Part shown: positions 12 to 61,352 of the stretch, in pieces
Layout: every line of letters begins with the position of its first letter
How positions within the stretch are numbered: position 1 is the first letter of the stretch
DNA from: Octopus bimaculoides
Lineage: Eukaryota
Reading direction: 5' to 3'
DNA length: 64,000 nt
NCBI RefSeq assembly: GCF_001194135.2
Contig: NC_068995.1
Span: 43,964,243 to 44,028,242 of the forward strand
The notes under the pieces: generated by a model
Seen by the model: only the letters and a program-made list of their open reading frames with translations
Told to the model about the DNA's origin: nothing
Databases searched by the model: none
Program-made: the position numbers and the translations under genes

Positions 12-170
12 CGAACTTGTTTCACTTTCTATCGACCAAATCCATTCACAAGTCTTTGATTCGCCTGAGACTATAGTAGAAAACACTTATCCAAGATGCC
101 ACGCAGGGGAACTGAATCTGCACCCGTGTAGTTGAAAAGCAAACTTCTTACCACACAGCCACGTCTGCGA
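12..170 (-). mobile_element. tRNA-derived SINE family A (CORE-type), head and core only
   Basis: Minus strand GTGGCTGTGTGGTAAGAAG...TTCAGTTCCCCTGCGTGGCATCTTGGATAAGTG.TTCTACTATAG matches the copies at 2711-2875, 14543, 16071 and 26443. CCTTGGGCAAGT-like core motif. Confidence 0.85.
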
Positions 171-2712: not shown

Positions 2713-2875
2713 CGACTAGTTTCTTTCAGTTTTCGTCTACCAAATTCACTCACAAGACTTTGGTCGGCCCGAGGCTATAGTAGAAGACACTTGCTCAAGG
2801 TGCCACGCAGTGGGACTGAACACGGAACCATGTGGTTGGTAAGCAAGCTACTTACCACACAGCCACTCCTGCGCC
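2426..2875 (-). mobile_element. Full-length composite SINE: tRNA-like head, CORE-like core, internal (TA)n/(TG)n, 3' tail ending in GTAAAA-type repeats
   Basis: Minus strand starts GGCGCAGGAGTGGCTGTGTGG and has B-box-like GTTCAGTCC, core CCTTGAGCAAGTGTCTTCTACTATAGCC, microsatellite ~2640-2710, and tail ...GACTGAAACAAGTAAAAGAGTAAAAAAGTAAAAG. Same architecture at 50696-51063. Confidence 0.9.
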
Positions 2876-14542: not shown

Positions 14543-14710
14543 GCAGGCGTCGATATGTGGTAAGAAGCTTCTTTCACAACCACATAGCTCCAGGTTCAGT
14601 CCCACTGCCTGGCACCTTGGTCGGATGTCTTCTACTATAGCCTTGCGCCAACCAAACCCTTGTGAGCTGATTTGGTAGACAGAAACTGAAAGAAAGGTGT
14701 CGTATATATA
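14543..14710 (+). mobile_element. SINE family A head/core, running into a gap
   Basis: GGTAAGAAGC...GGTTCAGTCCCACTGCCTGGCACCTTGG...TCTTCTACTATAGCC...GATTTGGTAGACAGAAACTGAAAGAA then (TA)n. Confidence 0.9.
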
Positions 14711-16070
14711 TNNNNNNNNNNNNNNNNNNNNNNNNNNNNNNNNNNNNNNNNNNNNNNNNNNNNNNNNNNNNNNNNNNNNNNNNNNNNNNNNNNNNNNNNN
14801 NNNNNNNNNNNNNNNNNNNNNNNNNNNNNNNNNNNNNNNNNNNNNNNNNNNNNNNNNNNNNNNNNNNNNNNNNNNNNNNNNNNNNNNNNNNNNNNNNNNN
14901 NNNNNNNNNNNNNNNNNNNNNNNNNNNNNNNNNNNNNNNNNNNNNNNNNNNNNNNNNNNNNNNNNNNNNNNNNNNNNNNNNNNNNNNNNNNNNNNNNNNN
15001 NNNNNNNNNNNNNNNNNNNNNNNNNNNNNNNNNNNNNNNNNNNNNNNNNNNNNNNNNNNNNNNNNNNNNNNNNNNNNNNNNNNNNNNNNNNNNNNNNNNN
15101 NNNNNNNNNNNNNNNNNNNNNNNNNNNNNNNNNNNNNNNNNNNNNNNNNNNNNNNNNNNNNNNNNNNNNNNNNNNNNNNNNNNNNNNNNNNNNNNNNNNN
15201 NNNNNNNNNNNNNNNNNNNNNNNNNNNNNNNNNNNNNNNNNNNNNNNNNNNNNNNNNNNNNNNNNNNNNNNNNNNNNNTATATATGTCTTCATTACATTT
15301 AAAGTTATGTACACCGGAGGTTTCGTCAAGATTGCTTTCATTCTGAAACTATATCTGAACTTATGAACTTCGTTACTGTACAACATGTGACGATTGCGCC
15401 TAAGGCGTTGATCGCCATCTTTATCTCTCTATGTCATAATATATGGAATGTTCAGGTACTTATGCAGAAATATTCTCACCGGCATTTTGTTGCTCAACAT
15501 TTCCGATATTAAGTTATGGTGGCATTATAAGAGCGGTAGTTACGTACGTCCAAATATCCAACAGAGAACTGCATTCTCTTTCTTTCTTTCTCTCTCTCTC
15601 TCTCTCCCTTTCTCTCCCTCTTTTTCTTCTTATCCCCCCTATATATATATGTGTGTGTGTGTTTGTGTGTGTATGTGTGTGTTTATTTCTGTGTGTTTGT
15701 GTATGAGTGCGTACAGCATACGTGCACACCTGTGTGTGTATGTATGCATCTATGTATGTCTGTATGTATGCGTATTTGTATGTATTTGTGTACGTATGTA
15801 TGCATGTATGTATGCATGTATGTATGCCTGTATTCATAATTTAAACAAAATTGAGCTAAGAGGAATAACTCAGAGTGGCTAGTGGCATGTATAGGAACAA
15901 CATAGACGAGTACAGGTGTATCAAATACCATAGAACATAAAAATCTTGATTTCTAAAATTATCTCTGCCTCTAAATGATGTTATAATTTTTAAAAAAAGA
16001 CAATTAAGATCAGCTCCACTTGTGTAGGGGAGATAATCGCAAGGATCAAAATTTCTCCAGAGTTAACAGT

Positions 16071-16225
16071 CGCAGGATTGGCTGTGTAATAAGAAGTGTT
16101 ATTCCCAACTACATGGTTCCCGGTTCAGTCCCACTGCGTCTTCCACAGTCTTCCACTATAGGCTAGGGCCGACCATAGCCTAGTGAGTAGATTTGATAGA
16201 CGGAAACTGAATGAAGCTCGTCGCT
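16071..16225 (+). mobile_element. SINE family A head/core
   Basis: Matches family A; small deletion at the start of the core. Confidence 0.85.
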
Positions 16226-16253
16226 TATATATATATATATATATATATATCGG

Positions 16254-16347
16254 AGAAGACACTCGACCAAGGTGCCACGCAGTGGGACTGAACCCGGAAC
16301 CATGTGGTTGGTAGGCAAGCTACTTACCACACAGCCACTCCTGTGCC
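16254..16347 (-). mobile_element. SINE family A head (3'-truncated), inverted relative to the 16071 copy
   Basis: Minus strand GGCACAGGAGTGGCTGTGTGGTAAGTAGCTTGCC...GGTTCAGTCCCACTGCGTGGCACCTTGG. Confidence 0.9.
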
Positions 16348-25998: not shown

Positions 25999-26042
<44 letters not shown>

Positions 26043-26442
26043 GTATAAATATAGTTCTCTCTTTTTAACTTATATATATTCACAACAATTCTTTCTTAAA
26101 TTTCGAACATCAATTTTCTTATTAGGTTTTATCCCAGCTTTCACACATTTAAAAACACGTCCACAAGCAGGCACCTACGATCACAGATATATTTAAATAC
26201 ATGCATGCACACATACATACATATATACATATATACATACAGGCATACATACATACATACATACATATATACATACATACAAACATACGTTCTTTCAAGC
26301 ATGCGTACATATATATATATAAACACGTGCATATATGCATATACACATACACACACACTACATATGTACATAAAGATAATGATGCAAATAAACAAATAAA
26401 ACCGCTTGGTTTAGATATATAAGAATACACATACGCATGCAC

Positions 26443-26570
26443 GCGTAGGCGTGGCTGTGTGGTAAGAATCGTGCTTCCCAAACACATGGTTCCAGGTTCG
26501 ATCCAACGGCATAACACTGTGGACAAGTGTCTTCTACTATAACCTCGGGTCGACCAAATCCTTGTAAGTA
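26443..26570 (+). mobile_element. SINE family A, ending at the start of the hammerhead repeat
   Basis: GTGGCTGTGTGGTAAG...GGTTCGATCC...GGACAAGTGTCTTCTACTATAACCTCGGGTCGACCAAATCCTTG. Confidence 0.85.
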
Positions 26571-26600
26571 GTTCGGGATCTGGAATTTTTGCCCCAGTAA

Positions 26601-26658
26601 CTCATACTAAAGAAGGTTGCGGTCCATCGGGCCAGAACCGGAAACCATGATATATGAG
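26601..26658 (+). ncRNA. Type I hammerhead ribozyme, copy 1 (G5-to-A core substitution, probably inactive)
   Basis: CTCATA CTAAAGA A GGTT GC GGTCC ATC GGGCC AG AACC G GAAA CC AT GA TA TATGAG; stem I CTCATA/TATGAG; GAAA intact. Confidence 0.7.
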
Positions 26659-27064
26659 CCTCTGAATTGCATAACCTTTATAGGTATTCTTTTTAATTCT
26701 TTATCCGTTTTCTCACTTACTGTTATTTTGGTGCCTTCCGGCGGTTGAATTGACACTTTAGCACTCATTTCTAAATACGTTGATGCTTACAGCATCCTAA
26801 TGCTTCGTGCTAATGTTATATGTTATATAATGCTATATAATGCTATTAAACCTGTGAAGCGCTTATGTTACTACTGATAATATTATCAGTTAAAAATGTT
26901 TACCATAAGTGGTATTAACAGTAGTAACACCTTATTTCGAATGTAAACATTTCGAATGTTTTGCTCATAAATATTTGCACGATGCGGACTGGTTTTTGGT
27001 GCAAAGCAAACCAGAACGCTGATGGATTTATAGTGTGGCAGATCTGGAATTTTTACCCCAGTAA

Positions 27065-27122
27065 CTCATACTGAAGAAGGTTGCGGCCCATCGGGCCAGA
27101 ACCGGAGACCATGGTATATGAG
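27065..27122 (+). ncRNA. Type I hammerhead ribozyme, copy 2 (GAAA changed to GAGA, probably impaired)
   Basis: CTCATA CTGAAGA A GGTT GC GGCCC ATC GGGCC AG AACC G GAGA CC AT GG TA TATGAG; all three stems pair; stem III is the palindrome ACCATGGT; GUA triplet ends at 27116. Confidence 0.75.
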
Positions 27123-27410
27123 CCTCTGAATTGCATAATTTTCATAGGTATGCTTTTTAATTCTTTATCCGTTTTCTCGCTTACTGTTATTTTCTATTAT
27201 TTTGGTGCCTTCCGGTCGTTGAGCTAAGCGGCTTCACTTTACGTACTTTAGCTTTGTTACTATTGCAACAGTTCGGACACTTATTGATCAGATCTTGTAT
27301 ATATGTATATATATACGCCCACATATACGTATGTCTGTGAGCGTGTGTACATAATTTTTTGACCAGTTATATGCAATAACTATTCACATATATTTCTCCT
27401 CAGTATAGAT

Positions 27411-27443
<33 letters not shown>

Positions 27444-27446
27444 AAC

Positions 27447-27512
<66 letters not shown>

Positions 27513-32315: not shown

Positions 32316-32831
32316 NNNNNNNNNNNNNNNNNNNNNNNNNNNNNNNNNNNNNNNNNNNNNNNNNNNNNNNNNNNNNNNNNNNNNNNNNNNNNNNNNNNNN
32401 NNNNNNNNNNNNNNNNNNNNNNNNNNNNNNNNNNNNNNNNNNNNNNNNNNNNNNNNNNNNNNNNNNNNNNNNNNNNNNNNNNNNNNNNNNNNNNNNNNNN
32501 NNNNNNNNNNNNNNNNNNNNNNNNNNNNNNNNNNNNNNNNNNNNNNNNNNNNNNNNNNNNNNNNNNNNNNNNNNNNNNNNNNNNNNNNNNNNNNNNNNNN
32601 NNNNNNNNNNNNNNNNNNNNNNNNNNNNNNNNNNNNNNNNNNNNNNNNNNNNNNNNNNNNNNNNNNNNNNNNNNNNNNNNNNNNNNNNNNNNNNNNNNNN
32701 NNNNNNNNNNNNNNNNNNNNNNNNNNNNNNNNNNNNNNNNNNNNNNNNNNNNNNNNNNNNNNNNNNNNNNNNNNNNNNNNNNNNNNNNNNNNNNNNNNNN
32801 NNNNNNNNNNNNNNNNNNNNNNNNNNNNNNN

Positions 32832-38072: not shown

Positions 38073-38312
38073 CTGTGAGTGAGTGCGTATGTGTGTGCGT
38101 GCGCGCGCACAGGAATGGTTGAGCGGCTATAGTAGAAGGCACTTACCCACCACTTACCACGAGGTGACATCTTGGGAAAATGTCTTCTACAATAACCGCG
38201 GGTAGACCAAAGCATTCTGAANNNNNNNNNNNNNNNNNNNNNNNNNNNNNNNNNNNNNNNNNNNNNNNNNNNNNNNNNNNNNNNNNNNNNNNNNNNNNNN
38301 NNNNNNNNNNNN

Positions 38313-38962: not shown

Positions 38963-39279
38963 GTGTGTCTGTTTGTGTGTGTGTGTTTGTGTGTATTTGT
39001 TGAACAAATGCAAAACTTGACCTATTACTACAATATCTACAAACTCCATCTATTAATTCAACATGTTTGGACTTGTACAATTACACAAAAATATACAGAT
39101 TTGGCCTTTTTAACTTGGCATGTAAAGACTTCATCCAATCAACGTATACATACTTTAGTCTATCCAATCAACATATAGATAATTTAGCCTATCGAATTAA
39201 CAGACATATAGTGTCCGGACGACAAGTCCTTAAATTATGTGGATTAGTTCGATCTCCCTGGGAATGAGAAAATGTAAAA

Positions 39280-39655
39280 AGCTGCAGTTTAATGTCCATC
39301 AGAAAACATTCAATCCATAGCTTTCCTCGATTTCCAATGTTGAATAGATTCTTTAATAGCATGTTTTGATCAACCTTGTCGAGTGTCTTGCTGAAGTCAA
39401 GATGCATGGAACCTGCACTGGAGCCATCACCCAGAGCCTTTAAGGTGCCATCAAAGAGACGCGGGAGCTGTGTTAGGCAAAGCCTGCCATTGCGAAAGCT
39501 ATGCTAGCTGGGAATAGGCAGGCTGTGACTCTCCAGAATGTGAGTTACTCGAGATCTAATACTCACTCAAATAATTTAATGAGAGGAGTGTTAAGTGAAA
39601 TTAGTTGGCAATTCTCCACAATTTGTTGCCTTTTTTGTGAATCCAAGAGAATTTT
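39280..39655 (-). mobile_element. CR1/L2-type LINE reverse-transcriptase fragment
   Basis: IHKKGNK..ENCQLISL...IKLFE*V, then S*HSFRNGRLCLTQL...MHLDFSKTLDKVDQNMLLKNL.NIGNRGKL.WIECFL: N-terminal RT motifs with stops. Confidence 0.85.
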
Positions 39656-50977: not shown

Positions 50978-51063
50978 CATATATACGAAGGCTTCTTTCA
51001 GTTTCCATCTACCTAATCCACTCACAAGGCTTTTGTAGGCCCGAGACTATAGTAGAAGACACT
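50696..51063 (-). mobile_element. Composite SINE (family A core + (TG)/(TA)n + family B tail), 5'-truncated
   Basis: Same layout as 2426-2875; the tail is expanded as a ~16-bp unit TATAAGTATAAAAGAA. Confidence 0.9.
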
Positions 51064-59383: not shown

Positions 59384-59488
59384 GAAGAAGAAGAAGAAGA
59401 AGAAGAAGAAGAAGAAGAAGAAGAAGAAGAAGAAGAAGAAGAAGAAGAAGAAGAAGAAGAAGAAGAAGAAGAAGAAGAAGAAGAAGAA
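59384..59488. repeat. (GAA)35 trinucleotide tract
   Basis: Uninterrupted GAA units. Confidence 0.95.
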
Positions 59489-60275
59489 CTAAAACTGTAC
59501 GCTACAAATGACAAACAGCTGGAAACATTACTACAGACAGTATATGATTATACCAAAGAAATAAACATGAAATTTGGCTTAGAGAAATGTGCCAAAGCAA
59601 CCTTGAAAAGAGGAAATCTAGTTAAGTGTAGCAACATCACACTAGATAAAGCAATGAAATAAGAGAATTGGAACAAAGCCAGACATATAAATACTTAGGA
59701 ATCAATGAACTAGATACAGCATACATAAATGAAAGAGAAGAATGAATACTATAGACGAGTTAGATTAATACTGAAAACAGAGCTCAATGCGAAAAGCAAG
59801 ATAATAGGTATCAACACTCTAACTGTCTCTGTTATAAGTTACAGTTATAATATCCTTAATTGGATATTAAATGAACTACTCAAAATAGACAGGAAAACAA
59901 GAAAAATAGTGACAGGATTTAGGATGCACCACCCAAAATCTGACATAGAAAGGTTATATACAAAACGTATAGAAGGTGGTAGAGGCCTTATACAGCTAGA
60001 AAACTATTACAAATTAACCACCATAGGACTACAAAAATACCTACTTCAGAAGCAAGGTAAACTAATACAAATAGCTACAAAACATGAACAAAACAAAAAA
60101 TCTGCTTTCAGTTTTTAAGGAAGCTGACAAATGCAAAAAAGAAGTCATGCTACCTAACAACTATGAAGAAAAAGAAGAAACAACAAAAGCTGTAAAGCAA
60201 CTGAAATCCAAACTAAATTGGAACAGCAACGGCTCATGATAAAACGATGAGAAGAAAATCCCCTTCATGGCAAAT
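59489..60275 (+). mobile_element. Dong/R4-clade LINE fragment 1 (RT C-terminal half and thumb), degraded
   Basis: LKLYATNDKQLETLLQTV...MKFGLEKCAK...TYKYLGI...YYRRVRLILKTELNAKSKI...DRKTRK...HHPKSDIERLY.KR.EGGRGLIQLE, ending at ..PLHGK. Confidence 0.9.
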
Positions 60276-61352
60276 TGGAGGACGGACCTGACAGCATACG
60301 GAAGAAGTTTAGAGACAGTCGAAATTAGGAGGGGCATCTTCCAAGGGGTCTGCCTGTCCACAGTGATCTTTGTACTGTGCTTGATACCACTAACACTGAT
60401 TCTGAGGAAAGCAAAAGCTGGGTCTGTATTAAAAAACCGCCAACAAAAAGTCAACCATTTGTTATTCATGGATGACCTCAAACTTTATGGTAAAGATGAA
60501 GCCCAAGTCAGTTCTCTCGTTGATATGGTGTATACTTTCAGTGCTGATATCAGAACGGAATTTGGACTGAGAAAGTGTGGTGTGTTAGTCTTGAAGAGAG
60601 GCAAAATCAAATGTATGGACGGGCTAACGATACCGTCGGGGGAGGTTATGAAGCAAATAGAAGAGACGGGTTATAAGAACTTGGGGATTTTTGAAATGGA
60701 TAAATTAATGGAGAAAGAAATGGCAGAAAAATTTAAGGTGTAGTACTTGCGCAGACTGAGGCTAATCCTAAAGTCGTAACTACATGGACGGAATAAGATC
60801 GAAACTATCAACACCTGAGCGGTTTCACTGCTTAGATATGGAGCAGAGGTACTCACATGGACAGTTGACGAACTAAACAGGTTAGACAGAAAGACAAGGA
60901 AGTTGCTAACTAGATATGGGTCACTCCACCCAAAAAGTGACACAGACAGACTGTATGTACCAAGAAAAAGATTGTGTAGAGGACTTATTGGATACGAACA
61001 CAGCATCAGAGCAGCAGAAAACAACATAGCATGGTATGTAAAAAAATTCCACAGAACCGCTATTACTAGAAGGTCAGGCTTGTGTAGGATGAAAGTTTGC
61101 GAAGATAAAGCACTATACAAGAAATTGAAAGCGAATGAAACTGAAAATAGGTGAGTAAAGAAAAGAATGCATGGTCAATTTCAAAGGGATGTTGAAGATA
61201 AGACAGACAGAGAAAAAAGATAGCTGTGGATGGCTAAAAGTGGTTTAAAACCGGAAACGGAGGCTCTAATCTGTGCTGCCCAAGATTAAGCACTAAGAAC
61301 AAACTACGTAAAATACAGAATAGACAACACAGGAGAAAGTAATAAGTGCAGA
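60267..61352 (+). mobile_element. Dong/R4-clade LINE fragment 2 (RT core and thumb to start of zinc knuckle), degraded
   Basis: IRRGIFQGVCLSTVIF...VNHLLFMDDLKLYGK...EFGLRKCG...HPKSDTDRLYVPRK...MHGQF...KPETEALICAAQD*ALRTNY...KCR. In-frame stops; a distinct subfamily from fragment 1. Confidence 0.92.

What the first reader, a model, noticed from the sequence alone, without database searches (positions are those of the whole stretch)
26577..27222. Retrozyme-like element: two hammerhead-ribozyme direct repeats that would excise a 464-nt RNA
Seen: two ~93%-identical repeats, offset 464 bp, each folding as a type I hammerhead. Stem I is CTCATA/TATGAG, extended by CAG/CTG past an internal loop; the CUGAAGA core follows; stem II is GGTT/AACC plus GGCCC/GGGCC; then GAAA, a palindromic ACCATGGT stem III and a GUA site. 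The 10.1/11.1 position is an atypical A.G pair. Predicted cuts after 26652 and 27116 would release a 464-nt non-coding monomer. Established: Penelope-like elements and retrozymes carry hammerheads with short palindromic stem III that act as dimers, and retrozyme monomers circularise. Inference: this is a cephalopod retrozyme or non-autonomous PLE family; I am not aware of a description of it. Both copies here look mutated, so active members, if any, would be elsewhere in the genome.
Basis: partly seen in the sequence, partly recalled or inferred. Interest (0 to 1): 0.88.

Follow-up and report, generated by a model that had tools for sequence, protein, structure and literature searches.

The report
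Decayed hammerhead-bearing retrozyme-like insertion
A 693-bp non-coding mobile-element insertion carries two mutated copies of a self-cleaving hammerhead RNA motif 464 bp apart; it looks like a dead copy of a kind of element (animal retrozyme / Penelope-like derivative) that is already known, mussels included.

Summary
The repeat is real. Segments 26577-26748 and 27041-27222 are direct repeats offset by 464 bp, 93% identical over 153 ungapped bases. Each carries a type I hammerhead-shaped motif. Copy 1 has G5>A and a broken helix III. Copy 2 has A14>G. Taking the canonical base at each differing site gives a complete core, which cofolds as a double hammerhead through the 8-nt palindrome ACCAUGGU. 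A motif this good is expected about 0.001 to 0.05 times per window by chance. No Rfam hammerhead model detects either copy. New here: the element is bounded by a 7-bp duplication, AGTTCGG, which occurs nowhere else in the window. It interrupts a tRNA-derived SINE copy. So it is a 693-bp insertion (26577-27269, 1.49 units) rather than a local duplication. It has 37% GC, no ORF above 53 aa and no Penelope ORF nearby. The two copies differ equally inside and outside the motif, which indicates neutral decay. Best reading: a dead copy of a non-LTR retrozyme or non-autonomous Penelope-like derivative. I could not test genomic copy number, cleavage or circular RNA, and could not verify the source organism. 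It is a new member of a known kind, of modest interest.

The parts
26437..26576 (+). 5' part of a tRNA-derived SINE copy, the target of the insertion
   Evidence: 70-80% identical to other copies in the window at 48-169(-), 2748-2874(-), 14545-14666(+) and 16071-16190(+).
26570..26576 (.). Left copy of the putative target-site duplication AGTTCGG
   Evidence: It abuts the first base of the repeat. AGTTCGG occurs only here and at 27270 in the whole window, on both strands. The empirical chance is about 0.007.
26577..26748 (+). Repeat X1 (172 nt), carrying hammerhead-like copy 1
26595..26664 (+). Hammerhead-like motif, copy 1. Helix I is 26601-26606/26653-26658, with a CAG/CUG extension. The core CUAAAGA is 26607-26613 (G5>A at 26609). 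Helix II is 26614-26640. GAAA is 26641-26644. Helix III is 26644-26651 (16.2 G>A at 26650). A17 is 26652.
   Evidence: The sequence itself. The MFE fold reproduces helices I and II. The motif fails my descriptor.
26749..27040 (+). Internal non-coding segment Y (292 nt, 33% GC), with a 64-nt imperfect hairpin at 26866-26929
   Evidence: No ORF above 37 aa.
27041..27222 (+). Repeat X2 (182 nt, with a 10-nt insertion relative to X1), carrying hammerhead-like copy 2
27059..27128 (+). Hammerhead-like motif, copy 2. Helix I is 27065-27070/27117-27122. The core CUGAAGA is 27071-27077. Helix II is 27078-27104. GAGA is 27105-27108 (A14>G at 27107). The palindromic helix III ACCAUGGU is 27108-27115. A17 is 27116.
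   Evidence: It is the only descriptor hit in the window, with one core mismatch.
27223..27269 (+). Right-end segment of 47 nt. It is either a diverged and rearranged start of a second Y, or a terminal tail.
   Evidence: Only ACTTTAGC-type similarity to 26749-26760. It is not significantly similar to the rest of the unit.
27270..27276 (.). Right copy of the putative target-site duplication AGTTCGG
27277..27316 (+). Probable remainder of the interrupted SINE, ending in its GTATATATGTATAT(AT)n tail
   Evidence: The reconstructed empty site aligns collinearly with SINE copies. The 24 nt just after the duplication are not significantly similar to the SINE, so this part is tentative.

Best explanation
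This is a decayed insertion of a small, non-coding, hammerhead-bearing retroelement: an animal non-LTR retrozyme, or equivalently a non-autonomous derivative of a Penelope-like element. A source element with a 464-nt unit was copied for about 1.5 unit lengths and inserted into a SINE copy, duplicating 7 bp of target. Whether the template was a circular RNA or a multimeric transcript is inferred, not shown. Before it decayed, a transcript spanning both repeats could have paired the two palindromic helix III segments into a double hammerhead. [quoted passage not shown] Since insertion the two repeats have drifted apart neutrally. Each motif now carries a substitution at an essential core position, so this locus is no longer expected to cleave. 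Shown: the repeat, the motif geometry, the substitutions, the duplication and SINE interruption, and the absence of coding capacity. Inferred: ribozyme activity of the ancestor, the circular RNA intermediate, and mobilisation by a Penelope-like reverse transcriptase.
For: The repeat and its 464 offset are confirmed. The motif geometry matches the published description of canonical metazoan type I hammerheads: helix I of 6 bp, helix II of 4 bp closed by a loop, and a short helix III with a palindromic loop that works as a dimer (PMC4209133). The motif is rare by chance, at 0.055 (loose) and 0.001 (strict) hits per 120 kb, and is unique in the window. At all four sites where the two copies differ within the motif, one copy carries the state compatible with a hammerhead. 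The site-wise repaired motif cofolds into the double hammerhead with an 8-bp intermolecular helix III, at -55.8 versus 2 x -21.4 kcal/mol. The AGTTCGG duplication is unique in the window (P about 0.007), and the SINE is collinear across the reconstructed empty site. GC is 37-38% and there is no ORF above 53 aa. The 464-bp unit lies within published ranges: 150-450 bp in PMC7229834 and 51-972 bp in bioRxiv 10.64898/2026.07.22.740005. A non-Watson-Crick pair at the base of helix II has a precedent in axolotl HHR_Amex2, which has U.U there (PMC7229834).
Against: No Rfam hammerhead model gives even a weak match. Neither extant copy has an intact core. The A.G pair at 10.1/11.1 departs from the highly conserved G10.1-C11.1 pair (PMC4209133). 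There is no second copy of the 464-nt unit in the 64-kb window, and none was found in the searchable collections, so family status is unproven. The array has only 1.49 units, and TRF does not call it a tandem repeat. The 24 nt after the right-hand duplication are not significantly SINE-like. The monomer is only moderately structured (z = -1.98).
Confidence: 0.7

Rival explanations
1. It is an internally deleted autonomous Penelope-like element. The two X repeats would be its pseudo-LTRs with their hammerheads, and the 292-nt Y would be what remains after loss of the RT/GIY-YIG ORF.
For: Penelope-like elements carry hammerheads in direct flanking repeats that arise from partial tandem insertion. 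They often have a 30-40-bp tail at one end (PMC8557442, PMC4209133). Here there is a 47-nt unmatched segment at the right end.
Against: There is no RT or endonuclease remnant in or near the element. The motif has a real helix III and a 4-bp proximal helix II, closer to the canonical retrozyme type than to the minimal Penelope type, which has a 7-8 bp helix II and no helix III (PMC4209133). The distinction is partly semantic if retrozymes derive from Penelope pLTRs.
Confidence: 0.12
2. It is an ordinary local tandem duplication of single-copy sequence that contains a hammerhead-like motif by chance. On this reading there was never a ribozyme or a mobile element.
For: There are only 1.49 units. 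No other copy is in the window. No Rfam hit was found. Both cores are defective. Genome-wide, a loose one-mismatch descriptor would produce on the order of a thousand chance hits, extrapolating.
Against: The strict-feature chance rate is about 0.001 per window, and that is before counting the 5-bp GC distal stem of helix II. The unique 7-bp flanking duplication and the interrupted SINE indicate insertion of the whole 693 bp, which slippage would not produce. The differences between the copies resolve to a complete core.
Confidence: 0.13
3. It is a composite SINE with a hammerhead tail, comparable to the Schistosoma Sm-alpha elements. On this reading the tRNA-like head at 26437-26576 and X1 form one element.
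For: The SINE head lies directly upstream of X1. The SINE tail contains ACTGAAAGAAG, which resembles ACUGAAGAAG in the motif.
Against: The SINE tail's similarity to X is not significant (p 0.04-0.19 across copies). Four other SINE copies in the window continue into the normal tail, not into X. Copy 2 has no tRNA-like head upstream. ARAGORN finds no tRNA-like gene.
Confidence: 0.03

Closest known systems
Metazoan non-LTR retrozymes (Cervera & de la Pena 2020, PMC7229834), for example the 350-390-bp Mytilus galloprovincialis repeats and the 330/350-bp axolotl repeats
   Same: Type I hammerhead in each unit of a head-to-tail repeat of a few hundred bp. Low GC, no ORF, and no LTR, PBS or PPT. A target-site duplication longer than 4 bp. 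A short palindromic helix III implying dimeric action, as in amphibians. A non-Watson-Crick pair at the base of helix II, as in HHR_Amex2.
   Different: Only 1.49 units here, against dimers up to large multimers. The unit is slightly longer, at 464 bp. Both ribozyme cores are mutated. Helix II is extended by a distal 5-bp stem. Copy number, expression and circular RNA are unknown. The sequence family could not be compared with the published ones.
Minimal hammerheads in the pseudo-LTRs of Penelope-like elements (Cervera & de la Pena 2014, PMC4209133; Lunse et al. 2017, cited in PMC6765202)
   Same: Hammerheads in direct flanking repeats produced by partial tandem insertion. A long helix II overall. 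An extra nucleotide after A9. Palindromic 15.2-16.2 positions. Expected dimeric action with low intrinsic activity.
   Different: No RT/GIY-YIG ORF between the repeats. Helix I is 6 bp rather than 4-5. A defined helix III is present. There is an extra G before G12, so 10.1/11.1 reads as A.G instead of the conserved G-C.
Schistosoma Sm-alpha / Sj-alpha SINE-like elements with hammerheads (Ferbeyre 1998 and Laha 2000, cited in PMC6765202)
   Same: A short non-coding repeat with a type I hammerhead in an invertebrate genome, here lying next to a tRNA-derived SINE.
   Different: Here the SINE is the insertion target, not part of the element.

Membership tests
Hammerhead ribozyme, type I | Three-helix junction with open helix I, closed helices II and III, and the core strands in the right order | tested here: met
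   Descriptor hit for copy 2. The MFE fold of copy 1 gives helices I and II. Helix III forms only between two motifs.
Hammerhead ribozyme, type I | Complete conserved core (C3 U4 G5 A6 N7 G8 A9, G12 A13 A14, A15.1-U16.1, H17) in an extant copy | tested here: not met
   Copy 1 has G5>A (26609) and copy 2 has A14>G (27107). Only the site-wise combination of the two copies is complete.
Hammerhead ribozyme, type I | G10.1-C11.1 pair at the base of helix II | tested here: not met
   Both copies have A.G at 10.1/11.1, which can also be read as one extra nucleotide on each strand. U.U at this position occurs in axolotl HHR_Amex2 (PMC7229834).
Hammerhead ribozyme, type I | Match to a curated covariance model (Rfam Hammerhead_1, _3, _II, HH9, HH10) | tested here: not met
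   No match at the gathering score or at E<=10.
Hammerhead ribozyme, type I | Covariation supporting the helices across family members | not testable with these tools
   Only two copies are available. The single helix difference (26623, C>U) keeps the pair as G.U. No other copies could be retrieved.
Hammerhead ribozyme, type I | Site-specific self-cleavage | not testable with these tools
   Needs in vitro transcription of monomeric, dimeric and repaired constructs.
Animal non-LTR retrozyme | At least two consecutive tandem units, each with a complete type I hammerhead (operational criterion of bioRxiv 10.64898/2026.07.22.740005) | tested here: not met
   Two motifs lie 464 bp apart, but both are incomplete. 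The array is 1.49 units and TRF does not call it.
Animal non-LTR retrozyme | Short non-coding unit of a few hundred bp with low GC and no LTR, PBS or PPT | tested here: met
   464-bp unit with 36.9% GC. The longest ORF is 53 aa.
Animal non-LTR retrozyme | Signs of transposition, including a target-site duplication longer than 4 bp | tested here: met
   A 7-bp AGTTCGG duplication flanks 26577-27269 and is unique in the window. The SINE is collinear across the reconstructed empty site.
Animal non-LTR retrozyme | Multi-copy family in the genome | not testable with these tools
   No second copy in the window. The source genome is not in any searchable collection.
Animal non-LTR retrozyme | Expression as linear and circular RNA of unit length | not testable with these tools
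   No transcriptome access.
Autonomous Penelope-like element | ORF encoding RT plus GIY-YIG endonuclease between the hammerhead-bearing repeats | tested here: not met
   Only 292 nt lie between the repeats and there is no ORF. The only RVT_1 fragment in the window is 33 kb away, at 60243-60740.

The most novel reading that the evidence does not exclude
The locus could be a fossil of a still-active, undescribed retrozyme family in the source genome, thought to be a cephalopod. Its master copies would carry a hammerhead with a purine-purine A.G pair in place of G10.1-C11.1 and a two-tier helix II. They would cleave as dimers and accumulate as roughly 464-nt circular RNAs in animal tissues.
Probability: 0.25. 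Interest if true: 0.5.

Novelty: new member of a known kind. Interest (0 to 1): 0.3.

Why it matters
If a genome-wide search confirms it, this would extend hammerhead-bearing retrozymes to another molluscan lineage. It would also add a natural core variant, A.G at 10.1/11.1, to the catalogue of dimeric hammerheads. The insertion boundaries are a small but concrete data point on how these elements integrate: a 7-bp duplication and a 1.49-unit length. Both fit reverse transcription of a template longer than one unit. This particular locus is inactive and tells nothing about function in the host.

Tried and rejected
(1) Rfam at the gathering score on the whole window, and at E<=10 on 801 nt and on 86 nt, gave no hammerhead hit.
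(2) I looked for other copies in several ways. blastn of the unit against the window found nothing. Exact-product look-ups of ORFs inside and beside the element found nothing. Protein searches with both translatable frames of the repeat found no candidate. A metagenome scan for CTGAAGA-N20-35-GGAAACCATGGTA gave 22 hits. All lacked helices I and II, and the number is about what I expected by chance, by my own rough estimate.
(3) SINE-tail origin of the motif is not significant.
(4) Identifying the organism failed. A literature search for the SINE sequence found nothing. The best relatives of an RT fragment were at most 70% identical. I fetched the ENA contig behind one of the closest relatives, and it held neither the SINE nor the unit.
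(5) The tail after X2 shows no significant similarity to the unit.
(6) The bacterial promoter/terminator scan is not relevant to a eukaryotic locus.
(7) Lunse et al. 2017 (PMC5785218) is not held in the library.

Full report
**Observation**

The window holds two direct repeats, 26577-26729 and 27041-27193. They are 93% identical without gaps at a start-to-start distance of 464 bp. With gaps the homology runs to 26748 and 27222, 88% over 182 columns, with a 10-nt insertion in the second copy. Weak similarity (ACTTTAGC) continues for about a dozen bases more. No other copy of any part of the unit exists in the 64-kb window on either strand.

**The motif**

Read on the + strand, copy 2 (27059-27128) has the following parts:
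- CAG, a 3-nt internal loop, then CUCAUA (5' strand of helix I).
- CUGAAGA (core).
- A, then GGUU-GC-GGCCC-AUC-GGGCC-AG-AACC, then G (helix II, in two tiers).
- GAGA.
- CCAUGGU, which completes the palindrome ACCAUGGU (helix III).
- A17, then UAUGAG (3' strand of helix I), a 3-nt loop, and CUG.

- Copy 1 has G5>A (26609) and a C.A mismatch in helix III (16.2 G>A at 26650).
- Copy 2 has A14>G (27107), giving GAGA.
- The fourth difference (26623) turns a G-C pair in helix II into G.U.

All of this can be read directly. Both copies share the A.G pair at 10.1/11.1. Copy 1's minimum-free-energy fold reproduces helices I and II.

**Is it more than chance?**

A hammerhead descriptor was run on both strands. 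It required helix I of at least 5 bp, helix II of at least 4 bp, helix III of at least 3 bp including 15.1-16.1, H17, and at most one core mismatch. It finds only copy 2. A relaxed minimal-hammerhead descriptor gives the same single hit. I then scanned 318 Mb of first-order Markov sequence with the window's composition:
- The loose descriptor hits 0.055 times per 120 kb.
- The observed quality (helix I of at least 6 bp plus an 8-nt helix III) hits 0.001 times per 120 kb.
- Neither figure counts the extra 5-bp GC stem of helix II.

The motif is therefore very unlikely to be random within one window. A loose one-mismatch hit alone would not be remarkable across a whole genome. Against this, no Rfam hammerhead model produces any match. 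That holds at the gathering score and at E<=10 on 801 nt or 86 nt. The core substitutions, the 27-nt helix II and the A.G pair may explain the failure, but I could not test that.

**Dimer**

At each of the four differing sites I took the state compatible with a hammerhead. This is an assumption, since no outgroup is available. Two such motifs cofold into exactly the double hammerhead. Both keep helices I and II, and the two ACCAUGGU segments form an 8-bp intermolecular helix III. The energy is -55.8 kcal/mol against 2 x -21.4 for the separate monomers. A monomeric helix III would need a 2-nt loop, which cannot form. This matches the published account of metazoan type I hammerheads with short palindromic helix III that act as dimers (PMC4209133, PMC7229834, PMC6765202).

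**Decay**

The copies differ at 10 of 153 ungapped positions, and 9 of the 10 are transitions. Four of the differences fall in the 58 motif positions and 6 in the 95 outside. There is no sign of constraint since the two repeats became separate. Both cores are hit at essential positions, so the locus is not expected to cleave now.

**Boundaries**

- *The target.* Immediately upstream, 26437-26576 is a tRNA-derived SINE copy that has several relatives in the window.
- *The duplication.* The 7-mer AGTTCGG abuts the first base of the repeat (26570-26576) and recurs at 27270-27276. These are its only two occurrences in the window on either strand. The empirical chance of such a recurrence is about 0.007.
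- *The empty site.* Removing 26577-27276 gives a sequence that aligns collinearly with other SINE copies. The match includes the characteristic GTATATATGTATAT(AT)n tail at the expected distance.
- *The weak spot.* The 24 nt between the duplication and that tail are not significantly SINE-like, so I hold this at moderate confidence.

The simplest reading is that a 693-bp element (26577-27269, 1.49 units) inserted into a SINE and made a 7-bp target-site duplication. That argues against a plain local duplication. It fits elements that integrate as more-than-unit copies (PMC4209133, PMC8557442, PMC7229834). The last 47 nt (27223-27269) are either a rearranged start of the next unit or a terminal tail.

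**What it is not**

- There is no ORF above 53 aa in the element. There is no RT or endonuclease ORF within 8 kb. The only RVT_1 fragment is at 60243-60740. It is therefore not an autonomous Penelope-like element.
- The idea that the motif derives from the SINE tail, or that SINE plus X form one Sm-alpha-like element, is not supported.

**Comparison with known systems**

The element matches the published description of animal non-LTR retrozymes in these respects:
- a type I hammerhead in each unit;
- a unit of a few hundred bp;
- GC below 45% (36.9% here);
- no coding capacity;
- a target-site duplication longer than 4 bp (PMC7229834).

Mussel retrozymes are 350-390 bp (PMC7229834). A 2026 preprint reports family consensus lengths of 51-972 bp and argues that these elements derive from Penelope pLTRs (bioRxiv 10.64898/2026.07.22.740005). 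A U.U mismatch at the base of helix II exists in the axolotl HHR_Amex2 (PMC7229834), so the A.G pair does not disqualify the motif.

By the preprint's operational criterion the locus fails, because that criterion needs two consecutive units with complete motifs. TRF does not call the array either. Family-level features could not be tested. These are copy number, covariation, cleavage and circular RNA.

For cephalopods, the open literature I could search mentions 235 Rfam Hammerhead_1 hits in the giant squid (PMC6962438) and Penelope-like elements in cephalopods (PMC8557442). It contains no described cephalopod retrozyme family. That the window comes from a cephalopod rests on my recollection of the SINE and was not verified.

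**Verdict**

What is present is a dead copy of a known kind of element. Confidence in the retrozyme / Penelope-derivative reading is 0.7. Novelty: new member of a known kind. Interest: 0.3.

Noticed in passing
window 48-169(-), 2748-2874(-), 14545-14666(+), 16071-16190(+), 16248-16342(-), 38178-38211(+), 51020-51063(-): Multiple diverged copies (70-88% identical) of one tRNA-derived SINE. The consensus reads ...GGCTGTGTGGTAAGAAGC...GGTTCAGTCCCACTGCG...CCTTGTGAGTGGATTTGGTAGACGGAAACTGAAAGAAG...GTCGTATATAT(AT)n. Two copies at 16071-16190 and 16248-16342 face each other tail to tail across a TA microsatellite.
   Followed up: partly
window 59384-61151 (+): A string of stop-interrupted ORFs from a degenerate retrotransposon. 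One of them (60243-60740) matches Pfam RVT_1 (E 8.6e-08). The closest database relatives are at most 70% identical and mostly come from ENA assemblies. I did not determine whether it is a LINE or a Penelope-like RT.
   Followed up: partly
window 26866-26929: A 64-nt imperfect palindrome inside the element's internal segment forms the longest hairpin of the predicted 464-nt RNA. Nearby is a 13-nt direct duplication, ATTTCGAATGT(A/T)(A/T), at about 26935-26962.
   Followed up: no
window, 20 gaps, e.g. 673-1112, 14712-15278, 32316-32831: The window has 4,028 N in 20 assembly gaps, and most of those whose edges were seen are bordered by microsatellites such as (TA)n, (CA)n, (ACAT)n and (GATA)n. 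Overall G+C is 33% of all 64,000 positions and about 35% of the called bases. This looks like a short-read draft assembly of a repeat-rich animal genome.
   Followed up: no
window 39192-39503 (-): An ORF fragment containing MHLDFSKTLDKVDQNMLLKNL, which resembles the N-terminal motifs of a non-LTR reverse transcriptase. It has no Pfam hit at E<=0.01.
   Followed up: partly
window 27405-27512: A compound microsatellite, (GA)n-(GACA)n-(GATA)24, lies about 130 bp downstream of the insertion. (ACAT)n and (CA)n tracts lie upstream at 25999-26360. The SINE and its insertion therefore sit in a microsatellite-dense stretch.
   Followed up: no
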